A stretch of DNA of 64,000 nucleotides from NCBI GenBank assembly GCA_002269645.1, contig NIVC01000732.1:248001-312000 (forward strand), read 5' to 3'. The DNA comes from Macrostomum lignano. Lineage: Eukaryota. Below the pieces are notes generated by a model. It was not told the origin of the DNA and did not search any database. It saw nothing but the letters and a program-made list of their open reading frames with translations. Numbering within the stretch: the stretch's first letter is position 1; every line of letters begins with the position of its first letter. A program made the translations under genes and the position numbers. Positions 12,836 to 36,902 of this stretch are shown piece after piece.

Positions 12836-14173
12836 ATGGCAGGTGCCGGTAATTGGCCTCGAGGCCAAGAAGTTCGCCACCGACAATTTGAGGTCGTTCG
12901 GGGCAGCAGGTACTCTGACTGCAGAGGACGATACGATTCCAGGGGCCGCGGCAGAGGTCGAGGCGACGGATGGACGTCAGCAGCACGGGAGAACATGAAA
13001 AATCAGAAGGCAAAGTGGAATTTTAGTACTCTACTGTGCGGGCCTGCCGACTCGCAGATTGTGTTTACCGAATACCAAGGCTTTTGCAATCAGAGGGCTA
13101 AAGAACTTCGCGATAAAGGTCACATTCATGTGGCCCTTTTTCGGACGACGACTGACGAAGAAGTGTGTCAGAATTTTCGAGAAAAGCTACGTTCGATCAC
13201 TACATCCATGACCGAATGCAAAGATTTGCTCAATGAAAATTGCCAATTGAGAGCTTTTATCCGGGTCGGAGATCTGTACTTCAATCACAGAAGCTTCCGG
13301 TTTGACAGCCGTCCTGGACCTCAGCTTAGAGACTTCGGTGATCTGATGGAGTCAGACAAGTTCGAAAAAGCGTCACAACGATTGGACAGATTTTTCAATC
13401 CCGATGAAGAAGGATTCTACCAGCGGCGCCCAATTACCTCAACATTCGTGACTGAGAAAACCGTGGCTAATCATGCCCTGCTGGAGGTGTTTCTCAGCAT
13501 GCGAGACTTTGAGGAAGTCAGGGACAACAGCGAAAAAGACGCGATTCTCACCGTTACATTGAACAAAAATCAGAAAAAATTTGAGCTCATTTTCGACGCG
13601 AAAAATCAGGTATTGGACTCTGTGATGCTGATCACTAGCAAATGGAATCTGAACATTGTCACAGCAAAGGGCACCGACTACCAGGGCTCATTTAACGAGG
13701 TCGCCGACTTCAGACTGCACTTCGAAGCTTCATTTCCCAGCGACACGGAGGAGGTCAATGAGAGCTTGGCTGCCGAAGGATTCAACAAAGAAGACCTGCA
13801 GCAGTTATTCAAAAGGATCGGCGAGGCACCGCCTGCCTCAGATTTGTTGTCGGATGGCTCCGAGAGGCACTATTGGCTGAAAAGTCTGCCGCAATTAGCA
13901 GAGAAGCTGGACTATCTTCGTGAGCAGTCTAATAAAACATTTGTACGGCATCACGACCGATGGCCACTTCATGTGCGGCTTCGGCAGTTCAAATTCTACA
14001 AGTTAGTAAACCCCGTGGCTGGCGTGTTCCAGCCGCTGGCCGGGGTCGAGCTGCGGGTCAGCGCTGATCTGGGCTGCTCCTTGGACACGGAGGTCCTTGG
14101 CGATCCGGAGTTCGTGAGCTACATGTGGGAGTGCTGCCAGCTGATGCAGGACCTGGTGGCCGCTTCGCTGTAG
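12836..14173 (+). CDS. Intronless uncharacterised protein, family paralogue 1 (445 aa, short RG-rich N-terminus)
   Basis: ATG-initiated ORF, highly similar to 31427-33448 and more distantly to 35673-36902. Confidence 0.85.
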   Translation: MAGAGNWPRGQEVRHRQFEVVRGSRYSDCRGRYDSRGRGRGRGDGWTSAARENMKNQKAKWNFSTLLCGPADSQIVFTEYQGFCNQRAKELRDKGHIHVALFRTTTDEEVCQNFREKLRSITTSMTECKDLLNENCQLRAFIRVGDLYFNHRSFRFDSRPGPQLRDFGDLMESDKFEKASQRLDRFFNPDEEGFYQRRPITSTFVTEKTVANHALLEVFLSMRDFEEVRDNSEKDAILTVTLNKNQKKFELIFDAKNQVLDSVMLITSKWNLNIVTAKGTDYQGSFNEVADFRLHFEASFPSDTEEVNESLAAEGFNKEDLQQLFKRIGEAPPASDLLSDGSERHYWLKSLPQLAEKLDYLREQSNKTFVRHHDRWPLHVRLRQFKFYKLVNPVAGVFQPLAGVELRVSADLGCSLDTEVLGDPEFVSYMWECCQLMQDLVAASL

Positions 14174-14446
14174 GCTTGACTCGTTTGTTGAGAGTCGGCC
14201 GGACTATTGAAGAAATTCGATGTATGTTTTCAATGTGTTTTCGACGATTATCTATCTTTCTATATAATCTATGTTCTACAAACTTATTGAAAGCCACAGC
14301 GTCACGTCGTTTTTATTTGAAGCAGTCTGCTCCTTGAACGCTATGCTCGTAAATGCATATGGAATATTGGTGTATATGAGAACGTTAGTATTGAGGCATA
14401 GCACAAATTTTAACTCTGCTTTACAACTTAGTTATTTTAAGAGCTA

Positions 14447-14630
14447 GTGAACCCCGTGGCTGGCGTGTTACAGCCGCTGCCCGGGGTCGAGCTGATCTGG
14501 GCTGCTCCTTGGACACGGAGGTCCTTGGCGATCTGGAGTTCGCGAGTTACATGTGGGAGTGCTGCCAGCTGATGCAGGCTCTGTGGCGATGCGACTCTCA
14601 ACTCGTTCGTTGAGAGTCGGTCGAACTATT
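14447..14630 (+). pseudogene. Decayed duplicate of the 3' end of the paralogue-1/2 gene
   Basis: Near-copy of about 14005-14205 (AACCCCGTGGCTGGCGTG...TACATGTGGGAGTGCTGCCAGCTGATGCAGG) with an internal deletion. Confidence 0.85.
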
Positions 14631-15319
14631 TTTTACTAAATTTGACGTACTCCTCATCCTGTTTTTCAATCTTCTCGTTTTCCTTCAATATTCTGAGGTA
14701 ACGTTCTTTATTGTCTTATTTTAATTGTTCTCATATTTATTCCGTGAACTACCAGGTAACAAATCACTACACGGTGTTTTCAGATTTTACAGTTTATTTC
14801 TGGTGCATACGAGTAAGCCGGTTTTACGCTCGTGTAATTCTATCATTCCATGTGTCCGAATGTTTATTTTTACTTTTGCCATAGTTCGCTTAACATCCGT
14901 TTGAAGCCGACGAAAGTAAAATGGCACAAAAATTTTACTTACATTTTCCTATCCTTTTCATAGTAATTACCTAATTAGCCCGTAATATGCGATTTTTAGC
15001 AGTTAATATCGGAGCGTGAAGAAGAGGAATTGAATTTATTTTCAATTCTTTCAGGGTGACCCATTCAGGATGAACTGAATATGTGTTATTGGTATATTTC
15101 TCTTTTAAAATTGCTATTTAGAGGGCAGTTGTAGGCATGGCAGGGTTCAGAAATTACGAGAATATTACGCGCATAGTTTGCGTGAGCCCGAGGTGGATTA
15201 TTCACCTGCAGCTGATAAATTAGCTTTAATTCAAATAAACTTGTGTGCATTCTTATAGACTAAAATAACTCCGTCTCAGTGCGCAACCAAAAATTTTTTG
15301 AGGGGGCGCTCTGGGGCGG

Positions 15320-15600
15320 GTGGACAGGAAGATCGGCTCTACGGCCGCGCGGAACAGGTGCACCTTCAAAGTCGTCTCTGGCAGCTGAATTGAAGACGCT
15401 CTTGAGAAGATAAGTGGAACGCCAGGCCTGGTTTCTCCAGCTTTTCGGAGACAATAGCAGCGGGGGTTCATCAGCAGGGCGACGAGGTACCGGAGTCCTC
15501 ACACACCGCGATGCTGTCTCCATTGAGCAGCGTCAGAGTTGTGACGGTGTTTGTGCCCACATTTTGAGACTGTTCCAGCTAAGAATTTATGCCTCTGGTC
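15320..15600 (-). mobile_element. Degenerate RTE-like non-LTR retrotransposon fragment
   Basis: The minus strand encodes frameshifted LLNGDSIAVCED, QAWRSTYLLKSVFNSAARDD and LKVHLFRAAVEPI, matching the 24487-25226 element. Confidence 0.75.
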
Positions 15601-16174
15601 TTTACGACTTGGTTGGGGCGACGGAAGAGAGGAAGCAAGTTTTAAGGCGTCAATTTTTGTGCGCTTTGAAACCAACTCTTAATTAATTAAAAGGTAAAGG
15701 GAACTAAGCTGTGCATACAAGGATTCTAGGGATTTCGGGGTACAGTTCCTATTCATTTTTACGCCCTCGATCTTATTTAGGGAGAAATTGGCAAGAATCA
15801 ATATATGAAGTAGGTTTCCTACAATCTCAATCTACCTTTTATAATGTTCCGTAAGATATTACTTTTAGTAGTTGGTTTTGTATACTAATCCCCTAGCCAA
15901 TCACCGAATTTCTATGCTTTTGTTTGAATGTTACCTTTTTGTTTTAATTTTTGGTTTGTTATAGGTCCCGGTATATTTTGTTTAATTGTGCTCCCATCAA
16001 TAGTCAGCCCACCTATGATCCCTCGAAAAATTATATATAAAGGCGCAAGCTGAAGCCGAAATAGACCAGAACTCTTTAAACTCTCTCGGTGAGCTCGAGT
16101 GATTTATCTACCAATTTGATTAGCTTTAAGAAAAATTCTACTGAAGGCTTACCTGTCAGTTCTTTATTAGAGAA

Positions 16175-17466
16175 ATACCGAGGTCGTAGAGACCCAGAGT
16201 AGGAATCTGGAATAGGGAGTTATCGAGGTCGTAGAGACCCAGAGTAGGAATCTGGAATAGGGAGTTATCGAGGTCGTAGAGACCCAGAGTAGGAATCTGG
16301 AATAGGGAGCTATCGAGGTCGTAGAGACCCAGAGTAGGGATCTGGAATAGGGAGTTATCGAGGTCGTAGAGACCCAGAGTAGGGATCTGGAATAGGGAGT
16401 TATCGAGGTCGTAGAGACCCAGAGTAGGAATCTGGAATAGGGAGTTTTCGAGGTCGCAGAGACCCCCCGACACCACGCTGTGCGTCGCTGCTGGCCACGT
16501 GACGTCCAGTTTCCACGCCGAGTTAGTGGCCATCGCCGAGGCCCTTAGGTGGGTGCTCGCGGCCCCGGACCCGGCAGAACTGTCGCCGGTCGGCATCTGC
16601 TCTGACTCCCTGAGCGCGCTCAGCGCGCTCGCGTCCGGCCCCGGGTCGACGGGCACCACCATGATCGACGCCGTCTGGGCCAGCCTCGCCGACCTCGCGG
16701 CCCGGAGAACCTCGGTCCACTTGCAGTGGGTGCCTGCCCACGCGGGAATTCCCAGCAACGAGGCCGTGGACGAGATCGCCAAGCGAGGCTCCACGCTGGC
16801 GCAAGGCACCGCGCCCGTCCCGTTGGCTGCCGCGCAGGCTGCCGTCCGCCGCCACTGCCTCGCCCGCTGGCACCAGACCTACAACGCGGCGGCCACCGAG
16901 GCGGCGAGCACGAGCTCGCTGGCCTGGCACCTTGCCTGCACGGCGGGCCGCCTGCCGCCTCCGCCGACGAGCCACCTCACGCGGCGGCAGGAGCGGCTGA
17001 TCTGCCAGCTGCGCGCCGACCGCTGCCCGGCCCTGCGGGGCTTCCAGGCCGCCATCGGCGTTGACGTGGCCCCCACCTGCCGCTTCTGTGGCGATGAAGA
17101 GGAGACGGCGGCCCATCTGCTGATCTCCTGCCCCGCCCTGACTCCACACCGCTGCCACCTCTGGGGACCAAGCCCGGAGCCCACGGCAGTTTTCGAGAAC
17201 TGCGTCGCGGTGTTGAACTTCCTCGGGAAGGCGGGCGCCGTCTGACGCCCGGTGCCATGGGCCCTGGCTCGAGCGCGCCCGAAGAAGAAGAAGAAGAAGA
17301 AGAAGAAGGTCGCAGAGACCCAGAGTAGGAATCTGGAATAGGGAGCTATCGAGGTCGTAGAGACTCAGAATAGGAATCTGGAATAGGGAGCTATCGAGGT
17401 CGTAGAGACTCAGAATAGGGATCTGGAATAGGGAGTTATCGAGGTCGTAGAGACTCAGAATAGGGA
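16175..17466. repeat. 45-bp minisatellite (16175-16465 and 17309-17466) split by a LINE insertion
   Basis: Period 45 (16201 to 16246); the same unit resumes after the insertion. Confidence 0.95.
16466..17308 (+). mobile_element. 5'-truncated I-group non-LTR retrotransposon (RNase H plus C-terminal zinc knuckle)
   Basis: AELVAIAEAL...CSDSLSAL...LQWVPAHAGIPSNEAVDEIAK (RNase H) and CRFCGDEEETAAHLLISC (CCHC). (GAA)n tail at 17281-17308. 13-bp TSD GTCGCAGAGACCC at 16453-16465 and 17309-17321. Confidence 0.92.
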
Positions 17467-17722
17467 GCAAAAAGCCGTATAGAGGCGAAATAAGCCGTGA
17501 AGGTGTAATATTTTATTCCTTGCCTTAGAGGCAGTCTGAACTGTTAGCAATCGTGACAAATAATTAGCTGAATCATCGTATTGATTTAATGTACGTTCGC
17601 TCTCTATGTACATCGCAGGCTTAACTTCAACTTGCATAAATAAAGCGATCACTGCCTCACGGGGCCTTCGTGTTTTTGGTGCTGCCAAATACCGCGTGTT
17701 ACAAGTGGTAGCAGAGCGTACT

Positions 17723-18514
17723 ATGGCAGAGGGCGGCAGTCACCGTGCGATTCCTAGGGCGTTCAGCTCAGGAAACTTTAAGGAGTGGCTCCAGCGGTTT
17801 GAGCTGTGCGCGGCAGCCAACAAGTGGGTAAATGACAAGCATTTGCACCTGCCAACGTTTTTGGATGGTGAGGCTCTGGCTGTTTTTCTTGAGCTCGACG
17901 AGAATAGCAAGAGCGACTACAGCAAAGTGACCAAAGCTCTGAGCCAGGCATTTCACCCGGACAGCCAGCAATTCTCAGCGCCGGATGCATTCGAGAGCCG
18001 GAAGCTGCTGCCGGGCGAATCTCCTCGGCTCTTTCTCTAACACCTGAAGCAGCTGCTAAAGGACTCTGGCATCAGCGAGGCAGGCGCAACGGCCACCATG
18101 CTGACTCACCAGTTCATTCGCGGACTGCCGGTGGACATCAGCAAGCAGATCAGAGCGGACGCGTCAGCCAAGACCGTGAGTGACGCTCTCGCACGGGCAC
18201 AACTGCTACTGGAGCTGCCTTCTGCCACCACGGACGGATTCAAGCAGCCTCTTGCAGCGGCAGCCGGAGCTGCAGGCAGCGCGGAGACTGCAGAACTGCG
18301 GGCTGCGGTCAGCTCGCTGCAGGCGACCGTCCAAGACCTGGCGGCGAAGCTGGGCTCAGAGGTTTCGGACTCCTGCGCGATTCGCAGTGCGAGGAGACAG
18401 CGCGAGGTGACCTGCTGGAACTGCCACCGCCGCGGTCACATCGCCAGGAACTGCAATCAGCCGTCGGGAAACGGCACAGGCCGGGGCAGAGCCCGCACCC
18501 CTGGCCAGTTCTGA
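17723..18514 (+). pseudogene. gag: Gypsy gag with one in-frame stop (18038-18040)
   Basis: MAEGG...FKEWLQRFE...HQFIRGLP...CWNCHRRGHIARNC zinc knuckle. Confidence 0.88.
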
Positions 18515-21500
18515 GCGCGGGCCCCAGCGTGAGTGGGTTGTTCCTGGGCGCAGAGGGGAGCGGTGCAGCCAGCAGCAGCGCAGCGGCAGTCGTCATCAGG
18601 CCGAACTCGGTGACATCCAAGCTGCAGTGCAGGATCGGAGGCGCGGACGTCATGGCGCTTATCGACTCAGGCAGCCAGGTGTCAATCGTGGACAAGCGGG
18701 TCCTGCAGAGCATGCGGCCAGCTCAGCTGGAGAGCGTGCACCTGGAGCTGCGGGCAGTCAACCAGTAAGCGGTGCCGGTGCGGCAGGTGGCCAGTCTGGC
18801 GGTGTCGCTCTGGTGTCTGAAGGTCTGGTTGCTGCCGTCATCATCGGGCTGGACTTCATCAAGGCCTGCAACATGTGCCTGGACTTCAGCGACAGTGCAG
18901 CAGAGACCCCATCAAAGGACTCTTGTGTGATCAACGGCGTGAGTCACCTCGATGCTGACAGTCAGCTCGAGGACATTGAAGAGAAGCTGGTGCCGGATTT
19001 CACCAAGGAGGAGATCGACCTGCCAGTCGCGGAGGACCCGGACATCCAAGCTTTGGTGCACGAGTTCAGCGACATTTTCACCAGGCGGCCAGGGCTGACG
19101 GATCGACACGAGCACAGCATCCCGCTGACTGACGATGTCCCGGTGCGGATTCCGCCGAGGAAGCTGCCGGTGCACTGGGAGCCCGAGGTGAGGAAGCCGA
19201 TTCAGGAGCTGCTGGACAATGACGTCATCGAGGAGCCGGACAGCCCGTAAGTGGCGACCCCAGTGTACGTGCGGAAGAAGAACGGTGACTTGCGGTTGAC
19301 GATCGATTATCGCGAGCTGAACAAGAAGACGGTGCGGTCAGCGTAGGGCATTCCGCAGATGGACTTCGTCAAAGACAAGTTGGCTGGCAACGAGATTTTC
19401 TCGGTGATCGACCTGAACGGCGGCTACTTCCAAATTCCGATGAAGCCGGAAGACAAGCAGAAGACGACCTTCAGCCCAGGGCCCAGAATGCCGCTGTACC
19501 AGTTCAAGCGGATGCCGCAGGGCGTCTGCGGCGGCCCGAGCTCGTTCACCATCCTAATGAACCGCGTGTTCAAAGGCGCCGCGCAGACCTTCACCTACAT
19601 GGACGACACGCTGTGCTTCTACAGATCGAAGGCTGAGCATCTCCGGCACCTGCGAGAAGTCTTCGAGATGATCAGAGGCGCTGGGCTCACCGTCCGAGGC
19701 AGCAAGTGCCAGCTAGGCTTGCCGGAGGTCACTTTTCTCGGCACCGTGTTCTCGGCCAAGGGTGCCACCGTGAGCCCTGAGAAGGTGCGCGCTATCCAGG
19801 AGTGGCCGATACCGCATTCGCCAACGCAGGTGCGGCAGTTCCTGGGCCTCTGCAACCAGTACAGGAAGTACGTGCCGAGCTTCTCCGACATCGCCGGGCC
19901 GCTGCACAGACTGACGAGCAAAACAGAGAAGTTCGAGTGGACCAGCGAGTGCGGCACGGCATTCCGACGTCTCAAGGAGGCCCTGCAGCAGCCGCCGATC
20001 ATCGGCCACCCGGATTTCTCCAAGGAGTTCCAGCTCTACACGGATGCCAGCAACACCGGAGTCGGCATCGTGCTCAAGCAAGGAGACCAGGTGATTGAGT
20101 ACTGCAGCAGAGCGCTTACGGCACCGGAGAAGGGCTACTCAACTGTCGAGAAGGAGTGCCTGGCTATCCTGCACGCCCTGAAGACCTACAGGCACTACCT
20201 GCTTGGCCGGCACTTCACGGTCTTCACCGACCACTGCCCGCTCACGTTTCTGAATTCTCAGCGGGTCGACAGCCATGGCCGGCTTGGGCGCTGGCGGTTG
20301 CTGCTGCAGGAGTTCGCCTTCACCATCAAGTATACCAAGGGCGTCGACAACGTGGAGGCGGACGGCCTGTCCAGGATGCACGAAAGCCATGGCGAGGTGA
20401 TCGGAGCGTCGGCAACGGAGCTACAGCCGAAGGTGTCCAATCAGGAGATGCGGCAGGCGCAACTTGCCGATCCGAAGCTCAAGCTGGTCCTCGCGGCGCT
20501 GGAGAAGGACAGCACGACGCCACCAAGATGGTCGGACACCAGCCTGAGACACCTCAGCCGCATCTGGCGGAAGCTGAGGATCCAAGATGGCTTTCTCTGC
20601 CGGGCATTCAACGACGCCGCAGGACCGAGAGACGTTCCTGTGATTCCGGAGTCGCTGCGGCGCCAGTTCCTGACCGACTTCCACGAAGGCATCGGCGGCC
20701 ACTTCGGGCCAGAGAAGATGGCCGATACGCTGAAGCAGGCCGCCTACTGGCCGGGATTGCAGAGCGATGTGGTGAGTTTCTGCCAGGAGTGCCAGACCTG
20801 CCAGCTAAAGGCGCAGCAGCGCCCCGCGGCCCCACTTGGAGAGATGCCGATCGGCAAGCCCTGGCAGACCGTGGCCATCGACGTGCTTAAGGTGCCGCTG
20901 TCAGACCGCGGCAACAGCTACCTGCTGGTGATGCAGGACCAGTTCTCCAAGTTCCTGACCGCCATGCCGATGCCAGACCAGACTGCCAAGACCATCGCGG
21001 ACGCTGCAGTCAAGGTTTTCTCGCTGTTCGGAGTTCCATCGGTCATCCACTCGGATCAGGGCGCGAACTTCGAGAGTGAGCTGTTCCAGGAGACGCTGCG
21101 AGCGCTGGGCATCAGGAAGACGCGCACATCGCCCTACCATCCGCAGGGAAACGGCCTTGTGGAGCGCGGCAACAAGTCGCTGTTGCAACTGCTGCGGCTG
21201 TTCACCGAGAGTGAGTCCAGCTGGGAGGAGCAGCTGCCGCTGGTGGTCCTGTCCTACAACTCCAGGGTCCACAGCTCAACCAAGGTGACGCCGCTGACTG
21301 TGATGACCGGCCGCGACCCGCAGCTTCCACCTCAGGTGCAGGCCAGCGAGCAGCAGTATGACATCGGCACCTACTCGGCGCTGCTGGAGCGTCGGTTGGC
21401 CCGCATTCGCGAGTTCGTTGAGGAAAACCTGGTGGCCGCCGGACAGCAACAGAAGGCGGCGCACGACAAGAAGGCGTCGGACCTGCCGCAGTTTCCGCAA

Positions 21501-21806
21501 GGCACCGAGGTGTTGCTCAGCATCGAGATGCGGCGATCGAAGCTGGCGCCGTACTGGGAGCCGGGCTGGACGGTGCTCGAGCAGCGCGGCCACTCGGTGC
21601 GCATCCGCCGCGCCTTCGGCATTCGGCCGGTCCGCTGGGTGCACGTGAACCGGCTGCGCAGGCGGCTCGCAGCCCAGGCCGATGCGGAGCAGCTCCGCGA
21701 GCAGCCGGTGACCCACGAGGTCGCCCCGGAGTCGAGCCAGGCCGAGCGGCGGTACCCGGCCAGGGTGCGGCGCCCTCCGGATTACCTCGGTGTGAGCGCT
21801 GAGTGA
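18472..21806 (+). pseudogene. pol: Gypsy pol (protease, RT, RNase H, integrase), disrupted in its 5' part; 19359-21806 remains open (815 aa)
   Basis: Protease LIDSGS, RT YMDD, RNase H YTDASNTG..EKECLAI, integrase H..H/C..C zinc finger and VAID..IHSDQG..GLVERGN. Stops at 18766, 19248 and about 19344, and a frame change after the protease active site. Confidence 0.92.
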
Positions 21807-24363: not shown

Positions 24364-24486
24364 TTAGTTGTCCTTGGTCTCAACTTTCAAGTGTGCCAGT
24401 GGAAGGGGCTTGCAGGTATCAATTAAAGAATCAACAACTTAAGTGCAAAGTCAAAAAGCTCACTGCTTGCCATGTACAAGTGCAGA

Positions 24487-25226
24487 AGAGGGCACCCGAG
24501 TTGGCTTGGTGATCAATGCATCCAAGAATGAAGTGCTCCACGTGGGCACTGCAACTACCCCTGCGCTAGCTCTACCAAACGGAGAAGTCGTCAAGGTGTG
24601 CGAAGACTTCCGCTACCTCGGCTCTCTTGTCTTGAGCCCTGACACCATTGTCTCTGACAGGAGAACTCAAGCCTGGCGTGCGGCACGCATGCTCAGGAGC
24701 ATCTTCAATTCAACCGCGCGCGACGATCTAAAGATGCGCCTTTTCCGCACTGCCGTTGAGCCGATTCTTCTGTATGGCATAGAAGCTGTACCGATGACTG
24801 CGACGCGACAGCAAGCCCTGGATGCCCACTACAGGTCGCTGCTCCGCTATGCCCTGGGTGTGCACTACCCTGATACAGTGCCGACCAGGGACCTGATGAC
24901 TGGCGCTGGTGTTCCCGCGCTCAGCTGCACTATCCGCAAACGCCGACAGATGTTACTTGGCCACTGCCTAAGAAGCTACGGCCGCGGCGAGCAAAATCCT
25001 CTGGCGCTGGCTCTCCTGCATCAGCCCACTGAGCGCCTGCGCCGTGGCCAAGGCCGAACTGTGACGCTATATGATACGTTTTTGACTGACTTGCAGGCCA
25101 TCGGACTCAGCCCCCAGTCCGCCATGACTTGCCCTTTTCGGTTGTTCTGCGAACGCGTCCGCGCAAAGACTAGCTAGATGTCTTTTTGTCTGTGCTTCTC
25201 TCTGCGTCGCTATATATATATATACA
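24487..25226 (+). mobile_element. 5'-truncated RTE-like non-LTR retrotransposon
   Basis: GLVINASK...CEDFRYLGS...LFRTAVEPILLYG...LLGHCLR...RRGQGR (RT thumb and C-terminus). (TA)n tail. 12-bp TSD TACAAGTGCAGA at 24475-24486 and 25227-25238. Confidence 0.9.
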
Positions 25227-25526: not shown

Positions 25527-25720
25527 GAAGGGTCGGGGGTTCGATTCTCGACCCACTCGGAACAATTTGTGAACAAGACACTTAATTCTGCATTGCTTCA
25601 GTTCACCCAGCTGCAAAATGGGTGCCAGCATTGGCTGGGCTAATTGAGGGTGTATGTGGCGACCCCCCAGTCCTTGGACTGAACAGCCGTACGCAGCCTT
25701 CAGATGCGCCGCGCAATCGC
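25527..25720 (+). mobile_element. tRNA-derived CORE-like SINE, 5'-truncated copy
   Basis: B box GGTTCGATTCT followed by CAAGACACTTAATTCTGCATTGCTTCAGTTCACCCAGCTGCAAAATGGG; matches the 45316 copy. Confidence 0.75.
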
Positions 25721-28590: not shown

Positions 28591-28605
28591 CTGTCTCTGT
28601 CTGTT

Positions 28606-28660
<55 letters not shown>

Positions 28661-28681
28661 ATGTCTGTCTGTCTGTCTGTG
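28591..28681. repeat. (TCTG)n microsatellite
   Basis: Directly visible. Confidence 0.95.
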
Positions 28682-28974: not shown

Positions 28975-30860
28975 CAAGGCTTACAGCTGAGGGAATTTCT
29001 GGAATCTCAAGGCTTATTGGGGAATTGCTCAGATGTCCTGGCTTACTGTGGAATTGCTGGGATGTCGAAGCTTATGGGGAATTGCTCAGATGTCCTGGCT
29101 TACTGTGGAATTGCTGGGATGTCGAAGCTTATGGGGAATTGCTCAGATGTCCTGGCTTACTGTGGAATTGCTGGGATGTCGAAGCTTATGGGGAATTGCT
29201 CAGATGTCCTGGCTTACTGTGGAATTGCTGGGATGTCGAAGCTTATGGGGAATTGCTCAGATGTCCTGGCTTACTGTGGAATTGCTGGGATGTCGAAGCT
29301 TATGGGGAATTGCTCAGATGTCCTGGCTTACTGTGGAATTGCTGGGATGTCGAAGCTTATGGGGAATTGCTCAGATGTCCTGGCTTACTGTGGAATTGCT
29401 GGGATGTCGAAGCTTATGGGGAATTGCTCAGATGTCCTGGCTTACTGTGGAATTGCTGGGATGTCGAAGCTTATGGGGAATTGCTCAGATGTCCTGGCTT
29501 ACTGTGGAATTGCTGGGATGTCGAAGCTTATGGGGAATTGCTCAGATGTCCTGGCTTACTGTGGAACTGCTATGATGTCGAAGCTTATGGAGAATTGCTG
29601 GGATATCAAAGCTTACAGCTGGCGGAATTGCTGGAATGTCAAGGCTTACAACTGGGGGGGGGATTGCTGGGATGTCCAGGCTTACAGCTGGGGGAATTGC
29701 TGGGATGTCAAGGCTTACAGCTGGGGGAATCGCTGAGATGTCAAGGCTTACAGCTGAGGGAATTGCTGAGATGTCAAGGCTTACAGCTGGCGGAATTGCT
29801 GAGATGTCCAGGCTTACAACTGGGGGAATTGCTGAGATGGCTAGGCTTAAAGCTGGCGGAATTGCTGAGATGTCCAGGCTTACAACTGGGGGAATTGCTG
29901 AGATGGCTAGGCTTAAAGCTGGCGGAATTGCTGAGATGTCCAGGCTTACAACTGGGGGAATTGCTGAGATGGCTAGGCTTACTGGGGAATTGCTGAGATG
30001 TCCAGGCTTACAGCTGAGGGAATTGCTGAGATGTCAAGGCTTACAGCTGGCGGAATTGCTGAGATGTCCAGGCTTACAACTGGGGGAATTGCTGAGATGG
30101 CTAGGCTTACTGGGGAATTGCTGAGATGTCAAGGCTTACAGCTGAGGGAATTGCTGAGATGTCAAGGCTTACAGCTGGCGGAATTGCTGAGATGTCCAGG
30201 CTTACAACTGGGGGAATTGCTGAGATGGCTAGGCTTACTGGGGAATTGCTGAGATGTCCAGGCTTACAACTGGGGGAATTGCTGAGATGGCTAGGCTTAC
30301 TGGGGAACTGCTGGGTTGTCAAGGCTTATGGGGAATTGCTGGGATGTCAAGGCTCACAGCTGGGGGAATTGCTGAGATGTCAAGGCTTACAGCTGGCGGA
30401 ATTGCTGAGATGTCCAGGCTTACAACTGGGGGAATTGCTGAGATGGCTAGGCTTACTGGGGAATTGCTGAGATGTCCAGGCTTACAACTGGGGGAATTGC
30501 TGAGATGGCTAGGCTTACTGGGGAACTGCTGGGTTGTCAAGGCTTATGGGAAATTGCTGGGATGTCAAGGCTCACAGCTGAGGGAATTGCTGAGATGTCA
30601 AGGCTTACAGCTGGCGGAATTGCTGAGATGTCCAGGCTTACAACTGGGGGAATTGCTGAGATGGCTAGGCTTACTGGGGAATTGCTGAGATGTCCAGGCT
30701 TACAACTGGGGGAATTGCTGAGATGGCTAGGCTTACTGGGGAATTGCTGAGATGTCCAGGCTTACAACTGGGGGAATTGCTGAGATGTCAAGGCTTAGTG
30801 GGGAAATTTCTTAGACTTCAAGGCTTGGCTGGGGGAATTACTGAGATATCAAGGCTTAGT
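28975..30860. repeat. Compound satellite: 57-bp dimer x10, then 33/66-bp units, then 128- and 218-bp higher-order repeats
   Basis: Period 57 (29041 to 29098). Repeat-ORF starts spaced 128 bp (29998, 30126, 30254) and 218 bp (30254, 30472, 30690). Core GGAATTGCTGAGATGTC.AGGCTTAC. Confidence 0.95.
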
Positions 30861-31426
30861 GGAGGCGTGGCTCTATTCTTTAATATTTTAGCAATATTTT
30901 CATTTACCTTTTTGCACTCCCCGAACGGGCTGGATTGCTAGTATACACTAAAAGATTGAGACATGGTGTTGCTAATTAATTAGTCATTTGCTAGCAGATC
31001 CAATAGCCCCGTTTGCCACTAGTCTGCCAAGAAGAACAGCCATTTTGAAAAGACAAAAATACGCAACACAACAAAAAAACTAGGTTTATATAGTATTCAT
31101 CATCAAAAACGAGTCTTGCAACTGTTCCAGTGTATCTCGTACAACTCCACCCGCCAGTGTACGAGCGTACATTTCCCTCGCTGGGGCAAGCGGGGGGAGG
31201 AAAGTGCTTGCGCGACTAGTGTACTTTTTATTCTCTCTCCAGACTGACTGTACGGGTCACGCTAAAATATTTCTTGGAAATACCCAGTGCCTCTAAAATG
31301 GATAGAAAAAGCCGAAAACGAAAACTATCGGCTCTTAAGTCAGGACCTCAATTAATGTAAGACTGAAAAGTTTATTTAGAGCCTAAAAATCCTGGTTAAG
31401 CAGCTTACTACCGATACGAAAAGCTT

Positions 31427-33448
31427 ATGGCAGGTGCAGGTAATTCGTTCGATTCCGACGACGGAGGCGAGTGGCACACGGTCTGGAAGGGCGGTAAGAA
31501 GAAGCGCCAGCCCGAATCCGAGACAGTCGAAAATTGGGCTCGAGGTCAAGAAGTTCGCGATCGCGACCGACAATTTGAGGACGGTCGGGATAGCAGTGTG
31601 AGTACCAAATCTTGGCGCCAAATACAAATGAGATGCGATGAGCAACATCAGATTCGTCCCGGATCCAAATTATTTCAGCGTGGCAATAGCGAGAGAGGCT
31701 CCAGCAGAGGCGGAGGTCGTGTCGGAGCTCGAGTCGGATGGGCCAACCGCGACAGCGACAATGGAAGCTCCAGAGATGACTACAGAAGCAGTGGCGGTCG
31801 TGGAGGTCGTGGCCGATGGGCGAACCGCGACGGAGATAGTGGCAACGCCAGAGACGACTCCAGGAGCGGTGGTGATCGAGGAGGTCGCGGGGGATGGGCC
31901 AACCGCGACGGCGACAATGGGAGCTCCAGAGACGACTCCAGGAGCGGTGGTGGTCGAGGAGGTCGCGGGGGATGGGCCAACCGCGACGGCGACAATGGGA
32001 GCTCCAGAGACGACTCCAGGAGCGGTGGTGGTCGAGGAGTTCGCGGGGGATGGGCCAACCGCGACGGCGACAATGGGAGCTCCAGAGATGACTACAGAAG
32101 CAGTGGCGGTCGTGGAGGTCGTGGCTCGTGGTTTAACGTCGAGGGCGAAAATCGAAACGCCAGAACCGACTTCAGAAGCAGTCGCGGCAGCGTTGAGTAC
32201 AGAGGTAGATACGATTCCAGAGGCCGCGGCAGAGGTCGAGGAGACGGAAGGACGTCAGCACCTCGGGACAGCAGGAAAAATCAGAACTGGAATTTTAGTA
32301 CTCTAATGTGCGGCCCTGCCGACTCGCAGATTGTGTTTACCGAATATCAGGGCTTTTGCAATCAGAGGGCTAAAGAACTTCGCGATAGAGGCCACATCCA
32401 TGTGGCCCTTTTTCGGACGACGACTGACGAAGAAGTGTGTCAGAATTTTCGAGAGAAGCTACGTTCGATCACTACATCCATGACTGAATGCAAAGATTTG
32501 CTCAACGAAAATTGCCAATTGAGAGCTTTTATCCGGGTCGGAGATCTGTACTTTCGTCACAGCAGCTTCCGGTTTGACAGCCGTCCTGGACCTCAGCTTA
32601 GAGACTTCGGCGATCTGATGGAGTCAGACAAGTTCGAAGAAGCGTCTCAACGATTGGACAGGTTTTTCGATCCCGACAAGGAAGTTTCCTGCCGACGACA
32701 CCTAATTACCTCAACATTCGTGACTGAGAAAACCGTGGCAAATCATGCCCTGCTGGAGGTGTTCCTCAGCATGCGAGACTTCGAGGAGGTCAGTGACAGA
32801 GAGAAAGACGTGATTCTCACCCTTACATTGAACGGAGAGCAAAGAAAGTTTGAGCTCACATACGACGCGAACAATCTGGTATTGGACTCTGTGATGCTGA
32901 TCACTAGCAAATGGAATCTGAACATTGTCACAGCAAAGGGCACCGACTACCAGGGCTCATTTAACGAAGTCGCCGACTTTAGACTGCAGTTCGAAGCTTC
33001 ATTTCCCAGCGACACGGAGGAGGTCAATGAGAGCTTGGCTGCCGAAGGATTCAAAAAAGAAGACCTGCAGCAGTTGTTCGAAAGAATCGGCGAGGCCCCG
33101 ACTGCCTCAGATTTGTTGTCGGATGGCTCCGAGAGGCACTACCGGCTGAAAAGTCTGCCACACCTGGCAGAGAAGCTGGATTATGTTCGCGAGCAGATTA
33201 ATAGAACCTTCGTGCGGGATCACGACCGATGGCCACTTCAAGTGAGGCTTCGGCAGTTCAAATTCTACAAGTTAGTAAATCCCGTGGCTGGCGTGTTCCA
33301 GCCGCTGCCCGGGGTCGAGCTGCGGGTCAGCGCTGATCTGGGCTGCTCCTTGGACCCGGAGGTCCTTGGCGATCCGGAGTTCGTGAGCTACATGTGGGAG
33401 TGCTGCCAGCTGATGCAGGACCTGGTGGCCGCTTCGCTGGAAGCTTGA
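31427..33448 (+). CDS. Intronless uncharacterised protein, paralogue 2 (673 aa) with an expanded RGG/GW-like repeat N-terminus
   Basis: ATG-initiated ORF; 78-bp (26-aa) repeats at about 31738-32150; C-terminal ~390 aa very similar to paralogue 1. Confidence 0.88.
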   Translation: MAGAGNSFDSDDGGEWHTVWKGGKKKRQPESETVENWARGQEVRDRDRQFEDGRDSSVSTKSWRQIQMRCDEQHQIRPGSKLFQRGNSERGSSRGGGRVGARVGWANRDSDNGSSRDDYRSSGGRGGRGRWANRDGDSGNARDDSRSGGDRGGRGGWANRDGDNGSSRDDSRSGGGRGGRGGWANRDGDNGSSRDDSRSGGGRGVRGGWANRDGDNGSSRDDYRSSGGRGGRGSWFNVEGENRNARTDFRSSRGSVEYRGRYDSRGRGRGRGDGRTSAPRDSRKNQNWNFSTLMCGPADSQIVFTEYQGFCNQRAKELRDRGHIHVALFRTTTDEEVCQNFREKLRSITTSMTECKDLLNENCQLRAFIRVGDLYFRHSSFRFDSRPGPQLRDFGDLMESDKFEEASQRLDRFFDPDKEVSCRRHLITSTFVTEKTVANHALLEVFLSMRDFEEVSDREKDVILTLTLNGEQRKFELTYDANNLVLDSVMLITSKWNLNIVTAKGTDYQGSFNEVADFRLQFEASFPSDTEEVNESLAAEGFKKEDLQQLFERIGEAPTASDLLSDGSERHYRLKSLPHLAEKLDYVREQINRTFVRDHDRWPLQVRLRQFKFYKLVNPVAGVFQPLPGVELRVSADLGCSLDPEVLGDPEFVSYMWECCQLMQDLVAASLEA

Positions 33449-34369
33449 CTCGTTTTTTGAGAGTCAGTTGGACTATTTACATTTGTTAAGTGGTAGGTGT
33501 TTTCAATGTGTTTCTCAGTTTTCGCCTTTGTCTCCAATCTATATTTCACTAATATATTCATAGTTCTAAATTCAGATCATTTTAAAGCGTTGTTTTATTA
33601 TCAATAGAATTAGTTTATCTTTGAAGGCTGTATTCGTACGACATGCATCTGGCATTGAGGTGATGTGAGAACAAAAATTATTGAAGCGTAAAACCAATGT
33701 TAACACTGTCCAGCATCTCTGGTTAGTTCATTCAATTTACAGGGTGTCATTCAGCGTTTTAGGTAACTTTCTGTCAGCTATTATATATTGTCTGTTTAAT
33801 TCTTATACTTTATTGTGTACCGGTAAACTAGCGCATCGGTACGCAGTGTTTTCAGTTTTTTTTGTACATAAGACAATTTATATCATTCGATCATTTAAGA
33901 TTGAGTTTTCTAATGTAAAAACATTTTTACAAAGTATCAACAGCATATGTTAATTTCAAAAAATACAGTTTCTTTGGAAAAGGTTTTTGAAAATAATTAT
34001 ATGATAGTGACGTTGTAGCCTTGACTTTGTCTCGAATTTTAGCTACGGTTGTAACTATTGATACGAGTATCTTCAGTTTTAGTGGTACTCTCGTATATCG
34101 CAAGGCATAGTGAGGCATACAGATACTACTCTAAGGGTTTACAGATACATGTGACGATCATATGTTTTTACAGCTGAAATTAAAAAATATGACATAATGT
34201 CTACTACGATACATGAGTCTATTGAGTAGCACACGTAGTTTTGATCAGCTGCTCTGCGCCCGGGTAGTCCCAGAATAATACAGAAACCCTGCCAGTGAAG
34301 TCCCTTACCTCGTATTTATAATGATACTCGTACTGATTAGTTTCCGACGGAAATGTACAAGCTTATTAA

Positions 34370-35177
34370 CAGTAGGAATACCAAGCCATTTTTCCGTTCG
34401 TCGAACTACCAAGAGGGGGAAATCCCTCGGACAATCTTTTTTGCTGCTCTGTATTGGAGCAACGCAGGCACACGAAATTCATGAACACAGGCTAACTTTT
34501 TGTTGGGCATCTTCTCAAACAAGAATAAAGTCTCCAGGCCTCCGGACCGTCGAGATATTCGAAGATTCTGCCAGAAGGTCAGATTTTTCCTATAAGCGCT
34601 AGTGTATGGGAAAAATCCCAGTGCGCCAATCAGCACTGCGCCTGTTGCTGATGCAACAGAATGTCCATAGTCACCTGTTGTCATCTGTTGAAGGTGCCGA
34701 CGGCGTCGGGTTGATGACGGAATGTTCGAGAGACTAGGTGAAGAAGTTGTTGAGGCTTGCCCACTGACGAGGCTTGATCGGCGAAACTAGAGACGTTTGC
34801 AACAGCATGTCCATAGTCACCTGCTGCCATCTAATGAAGGTCTAGAAGCTCCGCCTGGGTGAAGGTCAGTGAAGAACGAAGGCAGAGCTGATGCAGACAC
34901 ATGTGGTCGACATGCTGATGAAATTTGGACACCTGGCAAAGCTGCACTGAGGGATTTTTCCCATACACTAGCACTTACATGTATGGGAAAAATCCGACCT
35001 TCTGGCAGAAGCGTCGAATATCTCGACGGTTCGGAGGGCTGGCGACTTGATTCTTGTTTGAGAAGGTGCCCAACAAAAAGTTAGCCCGTGTTCTTGACTT
35101 TCGTGTGCCTGCGTTGCTCCAATACGGCGCAGCAAAAAAAATATCAGGGGGGATTCCCCCTCTGAGTAGTTCTACTG
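34370..35177. mobile_element. MITE/non-autonomous DNA transposon with ~250-bp imperfect terminal inverted repeats
   Basis: TTAA|CAGTAG...CTACTG|TTAA. Arms about 34370-34630 and 34945-35177 are reverse complements. Confidence 0.85.
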
Positions 35178-35672
35178 TTAATAAAATTACTGATGCAACT
35201 AGCAAGCGCTACTGTATGCAAGCACAAATTACTCGTACCCAGAACCCATGCTAGTATTTTAGCTTACGAGCGTAAAAGCCATTTGATAGCTACGACGATA
35301 TTGGTTTAGTAAATGTCCATGTCCAGAAAAGAACCCAGCTGGAGACGAAAGAACAAAAGCCGATCTACATATACTAGCTAATAAAAAATTAATAAGAAAG
35401 CAAAGTAAAACACGTTGGGGTATTCAATTGATGTGACATTTAGTATAGGGTGATGGTTTTATATGGATCACCTCTAACTGAGATGGCTTGAATTTCTAAC
35501 TATACTTGCTGAGCTCTATTTGGTTTTGCTATCTATATTTAATGCGATCGAAGAGTCCTAGTCTGACGTCATAGTTTTGTGGCTCTTAAGAAAGCTTTTA
35601 TACGGGTCAATTTTCCACATCTGCTCAATTTCAAGACGAGCGATAACAGGACGAAGCGTCCGAGAGCTGCAA

Positions 35673-36902
35673 ATGGCCGATAAAAACTTCAATAGATTCG
35701 ATCGCAGTCGCAATCAGGAATGGAGCATCCGGGTGCTTCTGTGCGGACCTGCTGACTGTCCGATTTCATTTGGGCCCTACAAAGGCCACTGGATAGGCAG
35801 TCCTGAAAAGTTGGAGTACTTCACTCGAAGAGGCTGGATCGGTGTGCCGCTGTTCGATCGCTCGAGCGATGAAGAGGTGCTTCAGCGCATCCGTCAGAAT
35901 CTGCAGTGCATGTCTAGCGACGCCGTTAGGTGTCAAGCAATTTGGACTGAGAAAGAAAAGAAGGAGAGTCGCTTCAACATGAGTCTTGAAATCGGAGATT
36001 TGTACTTCTTTGACAACAGCTTCGACTTCAGTCGCGTTCCCGGTCCGCGCTTGAGAGACTTCAACAGGCTCCTTGACACGGGCACCTTCTCGGAGGTGCG
36101 ACGCCTTCTTGAGAGCTACTTCACACTGAGAGTCAACCAAGAGAGAATGTTTTTCTCTTCAACTTTCACGCCAAAAAATATTTGCGTCAGTCGCGACACG
36201 ATTGAGGCATTCCTTGAAACAAAAGGCTTCGAAATCAAACAGAACGAGGAGCGCAGTCTGACCACAAGCCTCGAAGGTGCCAACCAAAAATTTGAGCTAT
36301 TTTTCAATCCTGCAAATCTTCAACTGCGAGACATAAAAATGGTAACCCAGAAGTGGAACCTAGACTTCGTCACTCCGAAGGGCAAAGACTACAGTGGCTC
36401 GTTTAGCGAGGTCGCTGACTTTCGACTGCAGTTCGACACTTCCTGTACAAGCGACTCTGGCAAAATCGTTACCGACAGTCTCATCGCGGAAGGATTCGTT
36501 TTGAAAGAGCTGAAGCAATTGTTCGAGAGAGTTAATAAGGCACAGAGAGACGTAGTGGATGCCTCCGATGATGCAGAGCTGTGGGAAGGCGCAGATCGTT
36601 GCTACCGACTCAAACTGCCACGTCTGCTAGATCGACTAGAAGACCCGAGTCAGCAGCTCAGTAGGTCCTTCGTTCGACGCCATGACCGATGGCCTTTCGT
36701 TGTTAAGCTACTCAAGATTCGCGTTTTCGAATTGGACGAATCAGCGGGAATATTCGTGCAGCAGAGTGTGCAGTTCCGGGTCACAGCAGGTCTGGACTGC
36801 TCCCTGGACCCGGAGGTCCTTGGCGATTCGGAGTTCGGAAGCTACTTGTGGGAGTGCTGCCAGCTCATGCAGGACATGTTGGCCTCTACCTTGAAGTCCT
36901 GA
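35673..36902 (+). CDS. Intronless uncharacterised protein, divergent paralogue 3 (409 aa from MADKNF)
   Basis: Conserves CGPAD, GDLYF, PGP.LRDF, KWNL..VT.KG.DY.GSF.EVADFRLQF, FVR.HDRWP and CSLDPEVLGD.EF.SY.WECCQLMQD. First ATG is at 35673. Confidence 0.85.
   Translation: MADKNFNRFDRSRNQEWSIRVLLCGPADCPISFGPYKGHWIGSPEKLEYFTRRGWIGVPLFDRSSDEEVLQRIRQNLQCMSSDAVRCQAIWTEKEKKESRFNMSLEIGDLYFFDNSFDFSRVPGPRLRDFNRLLDTGTFSEVRRLLESYFTLRVNQERMFFSSTFTPKNICVSRDTIEAFLETKGFEIKQNEERSLTTSLEGANQKFELFFNPANLQLRDIKMVTQKWNLDFVTPKGKDYSGSFSEVADFRLQFDTSCTSDSGKIVTDSLIAEGFVLKELKQLFERVNKAQRDVVDASDDAELWEGADRCYRLKLPRLLDRLEDPSQQLSRSFVRRHDRWPFVVKLLKIRVFELDESAGIFVQQSVQFRVTAGLDCSLDPEVLGDSEFGSYLWECCQLMQDMLASTLKS

What the first reader, a model, noticed from the sequence alone, without database searches (positions are those of the whole stretch)
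12836..36902. Unrecognised three-member intronless gene family with a conserved ~380-aa core
Seen: all three share RAFIRVGDLYF/SLEIGDLYF, EVADFRL(H/Q)F, HDRWPxxV(R/K)L and V(E/Q)xRVxAxLxCSLDxEVLGD; paralogues 1 and 2 are close, 3 is divergent. I recognise no named domain. Inference (weak): alternating hydrophobic/charged strands and the DFR motif recall triphosphate-tunnel (CYTH/Cet1-like) beta-tunnels, but no clear ExE metal motif is present, so an inactive RNA-binding derivative is possible. Variable RG-rich N-termini point to RNA-granule biology.
Basis: partly seen in the sequence, partly recalled or inferred. Interest (0 to 1): 0.7.

Follow-up and report, generated by a model that had tools for sequence, protein, structure and literature searches.

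The report
Flatworm-only gene family, probable tunnel fold
Three neighbouring genes in the flatworm Macrostomum lignano form a real, selectively maintained protein family with no detectable relatives outside that genus. A modest-confidence structure prediction suggests that its C-terminal half folds like the "triphosphate tunnel" proteins that bind or cut phosphate-tipped RNA, but without their catalytic signature.

Summary
Three same-strand ORFs share a 386–394-aa core: P1 12836-14173, P2 31427-33448 and P3 35673-36902. P1 and P2 are 90% identical and P3 is about 42% identical to them. All four quoted motifs are present, and dN/dS is 0.14–0.39.

The window is Macrostomum lignano contig NIVC01000732.1. 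A homeologous contig carries one A-type gene (P1/P2-like) followed by one B-type gene (P3-like), so an A–B pair is the conserved unit.

No relatives were found beyond Macrostomum-type sequences in Pfam, PDB sequences, an exhaustive HMMER pass over 1.84 billion proteins, or viral and metagenome DNA scans.

An AlphaFold2 model of the last 251 residues reached only mean pLDDT 52. Even so, Foldseek returned almost only triphosphate-tunnel (TTM/CYTH) folds from two libraries: Med18/20, RESC1-RESC2, CyaB, YgiF, Pct1, vaccinia D1, ThTPase and giant-virus mRNA 5'-phosphatases. E-values were 3e-4 to 1e-2, but TM-scores were only 0.28–0.43.

The defining ExExK motif is absent, and profile comparison with authentic CYTH chains gave nothing.

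A-type N-termini carry a 26-aa GW/RGG repeat array. About 35–44% of M. lignano genes are lineage-specific, so orphan status alone is ordinary. The proposed function is inferred, not shown.

The parts
12836..14173 (+). P1, an A-type family gene (445 aa). It has a short RG N-terminus (RGRGRGRG) and has lost the GW/RGG array. The core is 13013-14170.
   Evidence: ORF; alignment; dN/dS 0.27 vs P2 and 0.39 vs the homeologous A gene. It did not appear among the protein-database hits, so it seems to be unannotated.
13418..14170 (+). The modelled C-terminal 251 residues of P1: about 10-11 strands plus 5 helices, the probable TTM-like barrel region.
   Evidence: AF2 mean pLDDT 51.6, with residues 160-250 at 60-80. 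Foldseek hits are to TTM-fold proteins in the PDB and BFVD.
12523..12854 (+). Upstream block shared by P1 and P2 (70% identical to 31153-31445); presumed promoter/5'UTR.
   Evidence: blastn; sequences read.
14434..14630 (+). Broken partial copy of the family's 3' end (last ~65 codons, a 13-nt deletion and frame breaks).
   Evidence: tblastn/blastn; alignment A4. Homology to the homeologous locus stops at 14433.
31427..33448 (+). P2, an A-type family gene (673-aa ORF; 646 aa after splicing). It equals NCBI BOX15_Mlig021245g1. The core is 32285-33445.
31598..31678 (+). 81-nt in-frame intron (GTGAGT...TTTCAG) in the N-terminal region of P2.
   Evidence: P0001 lacks these 27 codons; splice sites read.
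31736..32179 (+). 78-nt tandem array encoding six 26-aa GW/RGG units (consensus sgGgrGgRggWaNrdgdngssRdD.R), each with an invariant Trp.
   Evidence: TRF; unit analysis in P2 and in the homeologous A gene.
35673..36902 (+). P3, the B-type family gene (409 aa from the ATG), with no RG N-terminus. It is not called in the NCBI annotation.
   Evidence: 97% aa identity and dN/dS 0.14 to the homeologous B gene, while the flanks are 76-86% identical. Not among the called genes of the record.
14054..14164 (+). 3'-terminal coding stretch (LDxEVLGDxEFxSY[M/L]WECCQLMQ) with unusually low synonymous divergence and high GC3. The equivalent stretch in P3 is 36777-36887.
   Evidence: 86% nt identity between P1 and P3 here. 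pS is 0.31 here vs 0.6-1.0 elsewhere. Codon identity is 23/28 vs 59/125, p=0.0006; GC3 is 0.82-0.90 vs about 0.60.

Best explanation
This is a Macrostomum-restricted family of real protein-coding genes arranged as a tandem A-B paralogue pair. In this window the A gene is duplicated (P1, P2) and the copies have been pushed apart by retroelement and minisatellite insertions.

Each protein has a ~386-aa globular core. In A-type genes a disordered GW/RGG repeat N-terminus precedes it. The C-terminal ~250 residues of the core most likely form a triphosphate-tunnel-like (TTM/Cet1/CYTH-type) antiparallel beta-barrel flanked by helices.

The family lacks the ExExK metal-binding signature, so the barrel is probably not a canonical hydrolase. 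It would instead be a ligand-binding or scaffolding module. By analogy with trypanosome RESC1-RESC2 and Mediator Med18/20, it might bind a phosphorylated ligand such as an RNA 5' end, perhaps as an A-B heterodimer. The RGG/GW tail would add non-specific RNA, condensate or Argonaute/Tudor contacts.

Shown: the genes, the selection on them, the taxonomic restriction, the repeat architecture, and the absence of ExExK. Inferred from a modest-confidence model: the fold. Inferred by analogy only: ligand, heterodimer and cellular role.
For: Family and constraint.

The organism and the conserved A-B pair at a homeologous locus.

Restriction: 0 hits outside the Macrostomum-type proteins among 1.84e9 representatives, none in Pfam or PDB, and none in viral or metagenome DNA.

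Fold: the sub-domain model has pLDDT 51.6 and pTM 0.48.
- In the PDB search, nearly all of the top 31 hits are TTM-fold proteins: Med18/20 at 2.6e-4, RESC1-RESC2 at 3.5e-3 with TMq 0.43, and CyaB, YgiF, Pct1, vaccinia D1 and ThTPase.
- The independent viral library is also led by giant-virus mRNA 5'-phosphatase/capping enzymes, a LEF-4-like protein and a phage CYTH protein.
- Even the noisy full-length model puts a Mediator chain first.

Literature: Med18/20 have the tunnel fold without activity (PMC4641920). RESC1-RESC2 are lineage-restricted, orphan by sequence, paralogous heterodimers. Each subunit has 10 strands and 5 helices, they lack the metal glutamates, and the complex binds 5'-ppp RNA (PMC10201420). 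The model here likewise shows about 10-11 strands and 5 helices.

No conserved ExExK. GW/RGG array.
Against: The model is weak. Half of its residues have pLDDT below 50, the MSA has 4 sequences, and the other four models score lower. Foldseek TM-scores are 0.28-0.43 with rmsd 9-13 A, below the usual same-fold threshold of 0.5.

The full-length model (pLDDT 35) gives no significant match. hhalign against authentic CYTH chains gives 0.1-0.2% probability, and it proposes a different register from the motif matches I made by eye. No CYTH, mRNA_triPase, Med18 or Med20 Pfam hit appears even at E<=10.

The placement of conserved charged residues on strand faces does not discriminate between readings. 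No expression, binding or interaction data were found.
Confidence: 0.45

Rival explanations
1. This is a lineage-specific family with a different or novel alpha+beta fold. On this reading the TTM-like Foldseek hits are an artefact of a low-confidence model made of long beta-hairpins and helices, and the function is unrelated to phosphate or RNA-end binding.
For: Mean pLDDT is 51.6 and TM-scores are 0.28-0.43. The full-length model gives noise. There is no sequence-profile signal to CYTH or to Pfam families. Between 35% and 44% of M. lignano genes are lineage-specific with no known domain (PMC5816591).
Against: Two independent libraries return the same fold class at the top, which is not the mixture expected from a random poor model. 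The count and order of secondary-structure elements fit the 10-strand/5-helix RESC-type barrel.
Confidence: 0.35
2. This is a catalytically active tunnel enzyme (an RNA/nucleotide triphosphatase, polyphosphatase or cyclase) that coordinates metal with non-canonical acidic residues, for example the invariant D358/E360 pair in LDxEV, E191, or E229/D232.
For: An invariant i/i+2 acidic pair follows the last long strand, and there are several invariant Lys/Arg/His residues (K189, K210, K219, R234, R312, H314, R316, R348). The TTM-fold hits include active enzymes.
Against: The defining ExExK strand is absent in all six sequences. In TTMs, loss of these glutamates inactivates the enzyme (PMC10201420, PMC4641920). 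Whether these residues face a lumen could not be checked.
Confidence: 0.1
3. This is a gene derived from a transposon or virus (domesticated, or still mobile) that happens to lie among retroelements.
For: The cluster is interleaved with a Ty3/Gypsy pol, LINE RNaseH/zf-RVT fragments and minisatellites. The P1/P2 duplication unit is little more than the gene itself. The best viral structural matches are giant-virus capping-enzyme modules.
Against: Copy number is low: only two NCBI proteins in the database, at two homeologous loci. The A-B arrangement is syntenic. There are no terminal repeats or TE domains in the proteins, and no relatives in 2.9 million viral contigs. Purifying selection is typical of host genes.
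Confidence: 0.05

Closest known systems
RESC1-RESC2 (GAP2/GAP1) of the kinetoplastid RNA editing substrate-binding complex
   Same: It gave the highest TM-score among the PDB matches (8cdp_A TMq 0.43, 8fn6_2 0.41). It is also lineage-restricted, with no domain recognisable by sequence, and consists of two diverged paralogues. The barrel has about 10 strands and 5 helices and lacks the catalytic metal glutamates (PMC10201420).
   Different: There is no detectable sequence relationship, and RESC is a mitochondrial protist complex. 5'-ppp RNA binding and heterodimerisation are shown for RESC and are only conjectured here. RESC lacks a GW/RGG tail. The family here also has an extra ~135-aa N-terminal core segment of unknown fold.
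Mediator head subunits Med18/Med20
   Same: These gave the best Foldseek E-values (7lbm_k 2.6e-4, 7emf_R, 2hzm). They are non-catalytic tunnel-fold proteins that pair as paralogous heterodimers (PMC4641920).
   Different: There is no Pfam Med18/Med20 match. Med18/20 are ~200-aa pan-eukaryotic proteins, whereas this family is genus-restricted, larger, and carries RGG/GW extensions.
Catalytic TTM/CYTH enzymes (Cet1/Pct1, poxvirus and giant-virus capping triphosphatases, CyaB, YgiF, ThTPase)
   Same: They share the predicted fold class, and basic residues are conserved on amphipathic strands.
   Different: The ExExK/motif-a glutamates are absent. Profile similarity is nil. According to PMC10201420, RNA tunnel triphosphatases are usually found only in viruses, fungi and protozoa, not in animals.
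RGG/RG-box and GW-repeat (Ago-hook) proteins such as FUS/nucleolin-type GAR domains and GW182/TNRC6
   Same: P2 has 8 RGG, 36 RG/GR dipeptides and 2 di-RGG motifs. It has six 26-aa units, each with an invariant Trp preceded in five of the six units by Gly or Arg, all in a disordered, Gly/Ser/Asp-rich context.
   Different: This is a compositional and motif resemblance only. P3 has no such tail and P1 has lost the array. No binding to RNA, Tudor or Argonaute proteins was tested.
Mlig-sperm1 family (flatworm-specific, testis-expressed; PMC5816591)
   Same: It is precedent for a multi-copy, Pfam-negative, lineage-restricted family in M. lignano with a germline role.
   Different: Mlig-sperm1 has planarian homologues, and this family has none detectable. 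No relationship between the two was tested or implied.

Membership tests
TTM superfamily (CYTH + Cet1-like) | Eight-stranded antiparallel beta-barrel forming a tunnel | tested here: inconclusive
   A sub-domain AF2 model (pLDDT 51.6) retrieves TTM-fold proteins first in both the PDB and BFVD libraries. TM-scores are 0.28-0.43, and barrel closure could not be inspected.
TTM superfamily (CYTH + Cet1-like) | N-terminal-strand ExExK motif (metal-binding glutamates; Cet1 motif a) | tested here: not met
   No ExExK or ExE is conserved across the six family sequences. The only invariant i/i+2 acidic pairs are D48/E50 (within DEE, core 48-50) and D358/E360 in LDxEV.
TTM superfamily (CYTH + Cet1-like) | Basic residues lining the tunnel that bind the triphosphate | tested here: inconclusive
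   Invariant K189, K210, K219, R234, R312, H314, R316 and R348 exist, some in i/i+2 register on predicted strands. Whether they face a lumen could not be determined.
CYTH domain (Pfam PF01928) / mRNA_triPase (PF02940) | Profile-level sequence match | tested here: not met
   No hit at E<=10 in Pfam for any member. hhalign against authentic 1yem/2dc4/2een chains gives probability 0.1-0.2%.
TTM superfamily (CYTH + Cet1-like) | Divalent-cation-dependent triphosphate hydrolysis | not testable with these tools
   This needs recombinant protein assays.
Non-catalytic tunnel-fold proteins (Med18/Med20, RESC1/RESC2) | Tunnel fold with the catalytic glutamates lost | tested here: inconclusive
   Loss of ExExK is shown. 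The outcome depends on the fold being right.
Non-catalytic tunnel-fold proteins (Med18/Med20, RESC1/RESC2) | Obligate heterodimer of two diverged paralogues | not testable with these tools
   Only circumstantial evidence exists: A-type and B-type genes are adjacent and co-retained at both homeologous loci.
Non-catalytic tunnel-fold proteins (Med18/Med20, RESC1/RESC2) | Sequence membership in Med18, Med20 or RESC families | tested here: not met
   No Pfam hits, no PDB sequence hits with the profile at E<=10, and none in the exhaustive HMMER search.
RGG/RG-motif proteins | Clustered RGG/RG repeats (di-/tri-RGG or di-/tri-RG with spacers of 0-4 residues; definition from my own knowledge of Thandapani et al. 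2013) | tested here: met
   P2 has 2 di-RGG, 5 tri-RG and 12 di-RG; P1 has 3 tri-RG; P3 has none. The criterion is therefore met for A-type genes only.
GW/WG 'Ago-hook' proteins | Multiple Trp residues flanked by Gly or small residues in a disordered region; binding to Argonaute/PIWI | tested here: inconclusive
   The sequence criterion is met: there are six units with an invariant W at 26-aa spacing in P2 and five in the homeologous A gene. Binding was not tested.

The most novel reading that the evidence does not exclude
The A and B proteins form a RESC1-RESC2-like heterodimeric 'reader' of 5'-triphosphorylated or otherwise phosphate-tipped RNA in an animal. That would be a lineage-invented link between RNA 5'-end chemistry and small-RNA pathways, and the first animal tunnel-fold RNA-end binder outside Mediator and ThTPase.
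Probability: 0.08. Interest if true: 0.8.

Novelty: new variant of a known kind. Interest (0 to 1): 0.45.

Why it matters
If the fold assignment holds, this would be an animal, genus-restricted, sequence-orphan version of the triphosphate-tunnel fold fused to a GW/RGG tail. According to PMC10201420, RNA tunnel triphosphatases are usually found only in viruses, fungi and protozoa. The nearest functional analogue is the trypanosome guide-RNA 5'-triphosphate binder RESC1-RESC2.

It would also be a concrete example of how a 'Macrostomum-specific' gene, a class that makes up 35-44% of this model organism's genes, can be assigned a testable biochemical hypothesis. M. lignano has established RNAi and transgenesis methods.

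Two of the three genes in the window appear to be unannotated in the public assembly, which is of practical use to annotators.

If the fold assignment fails, what remains is an ordinary, well-constrained orphan gene family.

Tried and rejected
1. Pfam on all members gave only sub-threshold noise: Intein_splicing 0.05, DUF5975, Peptidase_Mx.
2. PDB sequence searches with a single sequence and with the profile gave streptavidin-level noise and 0 hits respectively.
3. The word-indexed search found only P0001-P0003. In the exhaustive HMMER search, the only representatives matched were P0002 and P0003.
4. Full-length AF2 gave pLDDT 35 and was unusable; its Foldseek run gave noise.
5. An internal-duplication test of the two beta-rich segments by hhalign was negative.
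6. By-eye motif matches to CYTH (IVTAKG ~ hTxKG; LGCSLDTEV ~ LGxFxEIE) were rejected. hhalign against authentic CYTH chains gives 0.1-0.2% probability and prefers another, equally unsupported register.
7. Strand-face conservation statistics did not discriminate.
8. An RNA-level element as the explanation for the conserved 3' tail was judged less likely than GC-biased gene conversion or codon bias. GC3 rises to 0.82-0.90 there, and the effect is strongest between paralogues of the same locus. No Rfam family was found in the window.
9. Literature and supplement look-ups for Mlig021245, Mlig022533 and RGG found nothing; one spreadsheet had been cut when stored.
10. Viral and metagenome DNA scans found no relatives.
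11. A second large search to build a deep CYTH profile was not run. With a query of Neff 1.7 it could not have been decisive.
12. A spurious-ORF or pseudogene reading was rejected on dN/dS.


Full report
**What is there.** The window holds three long ORFs on the + strand at the stated coordinates.
- P1 is 12836-14173 (445 aa).
- P2 is 31427-33448 (673 aa).
- P3 is 35577-36902 as listed with a bacterial TTG start. The first ATG is at 35673, giving 409 aa, and this start is conserved in the homeologous copy.

A three-way alignment shows a 386-394-aa core. It is 90% identical between P1 and P2 and 42-43% identical between either of them and P3. tblastn within the window gives E=3e-84 for P1 against P3. 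It also reveals a fourth, broken piece: the last ~65 codons are duplicated at 14434-14630, with a 13-nt deletion and frame breaks.

**They are real genes.** Nei-Gojobori dN/dS is 0.27 for P1-P2. It is 0.18-0.26 for all the saturated comparisons, including the one outside relative. Between homeologous loci the B-type gene has dN/dS 0.14. Its CDS is about 97% identical while the flanks are 76-86% identical and full of gaps. The A-type cores give 0.25-0.39 and the RGG tail gives 0.45.

**Organism and locus.** The best database hit (P0001, hypothetical protein BOX15_Mlig021245g1 of Macrostomum lignano) is P2 with 27 codons removed. Those codons are a canonical GTGAGT...TTTCAG 81-nt in-frame intron at 31598-31678. 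'Intronless' is therefore true of the core but not strictly of P2.

The window lies in contig NIVC01000732.1 of GCA_002269645.1. A second contig (NIVC01001096.1, locus L002) carries the homeologous locus. It has one intact A-type gene of 649 aa, whose RGG tail resembles P2 and whose core is 95% identical in nucleotides to P1. A B-type gene 97% identical to P3 follows 3.4 kb downstream.

The conserved unit is therefore an A-B pair. In the window the A gene has been duplicated, and P1 has lost the repeat array. The copies are separated by a Ty3/Gypsy pol (18627-21806), LINE RNaseH/zf-RVT fragments and large minisatellites. Neither B-type gene is called in the NCBI annotation, and P1 did not appear among the database proteins.

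**Taxonomic restriction.** The following searches all failed to find relatives outside Macrostomum-type sequences:
- Pfam gave nothing above noise for any member.
- PDB sequences gave nothing, even with a profile at E<=10.
- The word-indexed search of 5.8 billion proteins found only P0001, P0003 (the truncated model of the homeologous A gene) and P0002. P0002 is a 56-59%-identical protein on a 1.2-kb Logan contig of run SRR28338164.
- An exhaustive HMMER pass over 1.84 billion representatives matched only the two representatives P0002 and P0003.
- Scans of viral and metagenome DNA found no relatives.

This must be read against the published baseline. In M. lignano, 35-44% of genes are 'Macrostomum-specific'. 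They are enriched among germline genes (48-54%) and depleted among neoblast genes (11-14%) (PMC5816591). Orphan status alone is ordinary in this genome.

**Fold.** AF2 on the whole core with the 4-sequence alignment failed (pLDDT 35). AF2 on the last 251 residues did better, with mean pLDDT 51.6 and pTM 0.48. Residues 160-250 reached 60-80; they form three long antiparallel strands followed by a C-terminal helix. An N-terminal helix/strand unit reached 50-76. In all the model has about 10-11 strands and 5 helices.

Foldseek with this model against the PDB returned a strikingly uniform list:
- Mediator Med18/Med20 (best E=2.6e-4)
- RESC1-RESC2 (3.5e-3, TMq 0.43)
- class IV adenylyl cyclase CyaB
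- E. coli YgiF
- S. pombe Pct1
- the vaccinia capping enzyme
- mouse thiamine triphosphatase

The independent viral library was led by giant-virus 'mRNA 5'-phosphatase'/capping enzymes (Sylvanvirus 1.9e-3, Pyramimonas orientalis virus 3.6e-3, Orpheovirus, Pithovirus). A LEF-4-like protein and a phage CYTH protein also appeared.

The literature confirms that all of these share the triphosphate-tunnel fold. Med18/20 have it without activity (PMC4641920). RESC1-RESC2 are kinetoplastid-only, sequence-orphan paralogues that form imperfect 10-strand/5-helix barrels. They resemble Cet1 and the mimivirus enzyme, lack two of the three metal glutamates, and bind 5'-triphosphate RNA (PMC10201420).

The caveats are serious. 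TM-scores are 0.28-0.43 with rmsd 9-13 A. Half of the model is below pLDDT 50. The full-length model gives only noise, although a Mediator chain is again first. I rate the fold assignment at roughly even odds.

**Sequence-level membership.** The ExExK signature is absent from all six family sequences. The only invariant i/i+2 acidic pairs are D48/E50 (within DEE, core 48-50) and D358/E360 in LDxEV.

I harvested authentic CYTH chains (1yem, 2dc4, 2een) from the PDB and compared profiles. Probability was 0.1-0.2%, and the register contradicted my own by-eye motif matches, so I discard those matches. An internal-repeat test was negative. Conserved Lys/Arg/His residues exist on amphipathic strands, but the statistic does not discriminate.

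The family therefore may work like a non-catalytic tunnel protein, but it is not a demonstrable member of CYTH, Cet1, Med18/20 or RESC.

**N-termini.** P2 carries a 78-nt tandem array encoding six 26-aa units. In every unit the Trp, an Asn at +2 and two Arg are invariant (consensus sgGgrGgRggWaNrdgdngssRdD.R). The homeologous A gene keeps five such units with the same invariant Trp.

P2 has 8 RGG and 36 RG/GR dipeptides, P1 keeps only RGRGRGRG, and P3 has none. From general knowledge, such tails bind RNA, drive condensation, are arginine-methylated for Tudor binding, and GW repeats can hook Argonautes. None of this was tested.

**Mechanism proposed.** The steps shown and the steps inferred are marked in the Best explanation section. 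In brief, the core would be a tunnel-like barrel without the hydrolytic glutamates that binds a phosphorylated ligand, most plausibly an RNA 5' end. It might act as an A-B heterodimer, and the A-type GW/RGG tail would supply avidity or partner recruitment.

The rivals are:
- a different fold altogether (0.35)
- an active non-canonical enzyme (0.10)
- a TE- or virus-derived gene (0.05)

**Side observations.**
- The last ~30 codons show low synonymous divergence and very high GC3, strongest between paralogues of the same locus. This points to GC-biased gene conversion rather than an RNA element.
- A tRNA-like box recurs three times in the window.
- The Logan contig has in-frame stops in its RGG region.

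**Verdict.** This is a new sequence family, probably a new variant of a known fold class. Interest is moderate (0.45) because the key structural inference is still weak and nothing is known about expression.

Noticed in passing
window 14434-14630: A broken partial duplicate of the family's 3' end lies 260 bp downstream of the P1 stop codon. Homology between the window and the homeologous contig ends at 14433, exactly where this fragment begins, so it may mark the breakpoint of the A-gene duplication.
   Followed up: partly
window 14054-14164, 33322-33432, 36777-36887; L001 ~1120-1224: The last ~30 codons are 86% identical at nucleotide level between paralogues that are otherwise saturated at synonymous sites. 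pS is 0.31 here against 0.6-1.0 elsewhere, and GC3 is 0.82-0.90 against about 0.60. This is probably GC-biased gene conversion or strong codon bias. An RNA-level constraint is not excluded.
   Followed up: partly
window 35673-36902 and 12836-14173; L002 15300-16559: P3, its homeologous copy and apparently P1 are not called as genes in the GCA_002269645.1 annotation, despite dN/dS of 0.14-0.39. The homeologous A gene is annotated only as a truncated 373-aa model (P0003), although a 649-aa ORF is intact.
   Followed up: partly
L001 1-120 (Logan contig of SRR28338164): The only non-lignano-like relative has in-frame TGA and TAG codons inside its RGG-rich region, just upstream of the conserved core (RG*GGGGGMRGRRGGGRN*SWNFWTLLCG). 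This could be a pseudogenised tail, an assembly error or an alternative start. The species of the run is unknown.
   Followed up: no
window 37125-37200, also 25531-25549 and 45359-45377: A tRNA-like sequence with a perfect GGTTCGATTCC T-arm box lies downstream of P3. Similar boxes occur three times in the window (0.01 expected by chance). ARAGORN and Rfam do not call it a tRNA, so it is probably a tRNA-derived SINE.
   Followed up: partly
window 16156-17470, 18627-21806, 24443-25177: Retroelement debris lies between P1 and P2. It comprises a LINE-type RNaseH/zf-RVT ORF bracketed by 45-nt minisatellites, a GC-rich (62%) Ty3/Gypsy pol (RT, RNaseH, integrase) of 815 aa, and a further RT-like ORF without a Pfam hit.
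   Followed up: partly
window 28975-30862: A 1.9-kb minisatellite (33/57-nt units) sits directly upstream of P2 and is also present upstream of the homeologous A gene. The whole window is extremely rich in minisatellites (51 TRF rows).
   Followed up: no
window 37945-38706: This ORF has a hydrophobic, probably membrane-spanning segment and no Pfam match. Its counterpart is a called 247-aa gene at the homeologous locus (L002 17652-18395), so it is a conserved neighbour of the family.
   Followed up: no
window 49472-51511 (- strand): Two adjacent ORFs encode ankyrin repeats (Ank_2 E=3e-59 and 7e-27). They are probably exons of one ankyrin-repeat gene.
   Followed up: no
window 14176-14200, 33448-33472: A short hairpin-capable sequence (GACTC-N9-GAGTC) immediately follows the stop codon of P1 and P2 and also occurs in the 3' pseudo-fragment. 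It is absent from P3.
   Followed up: no
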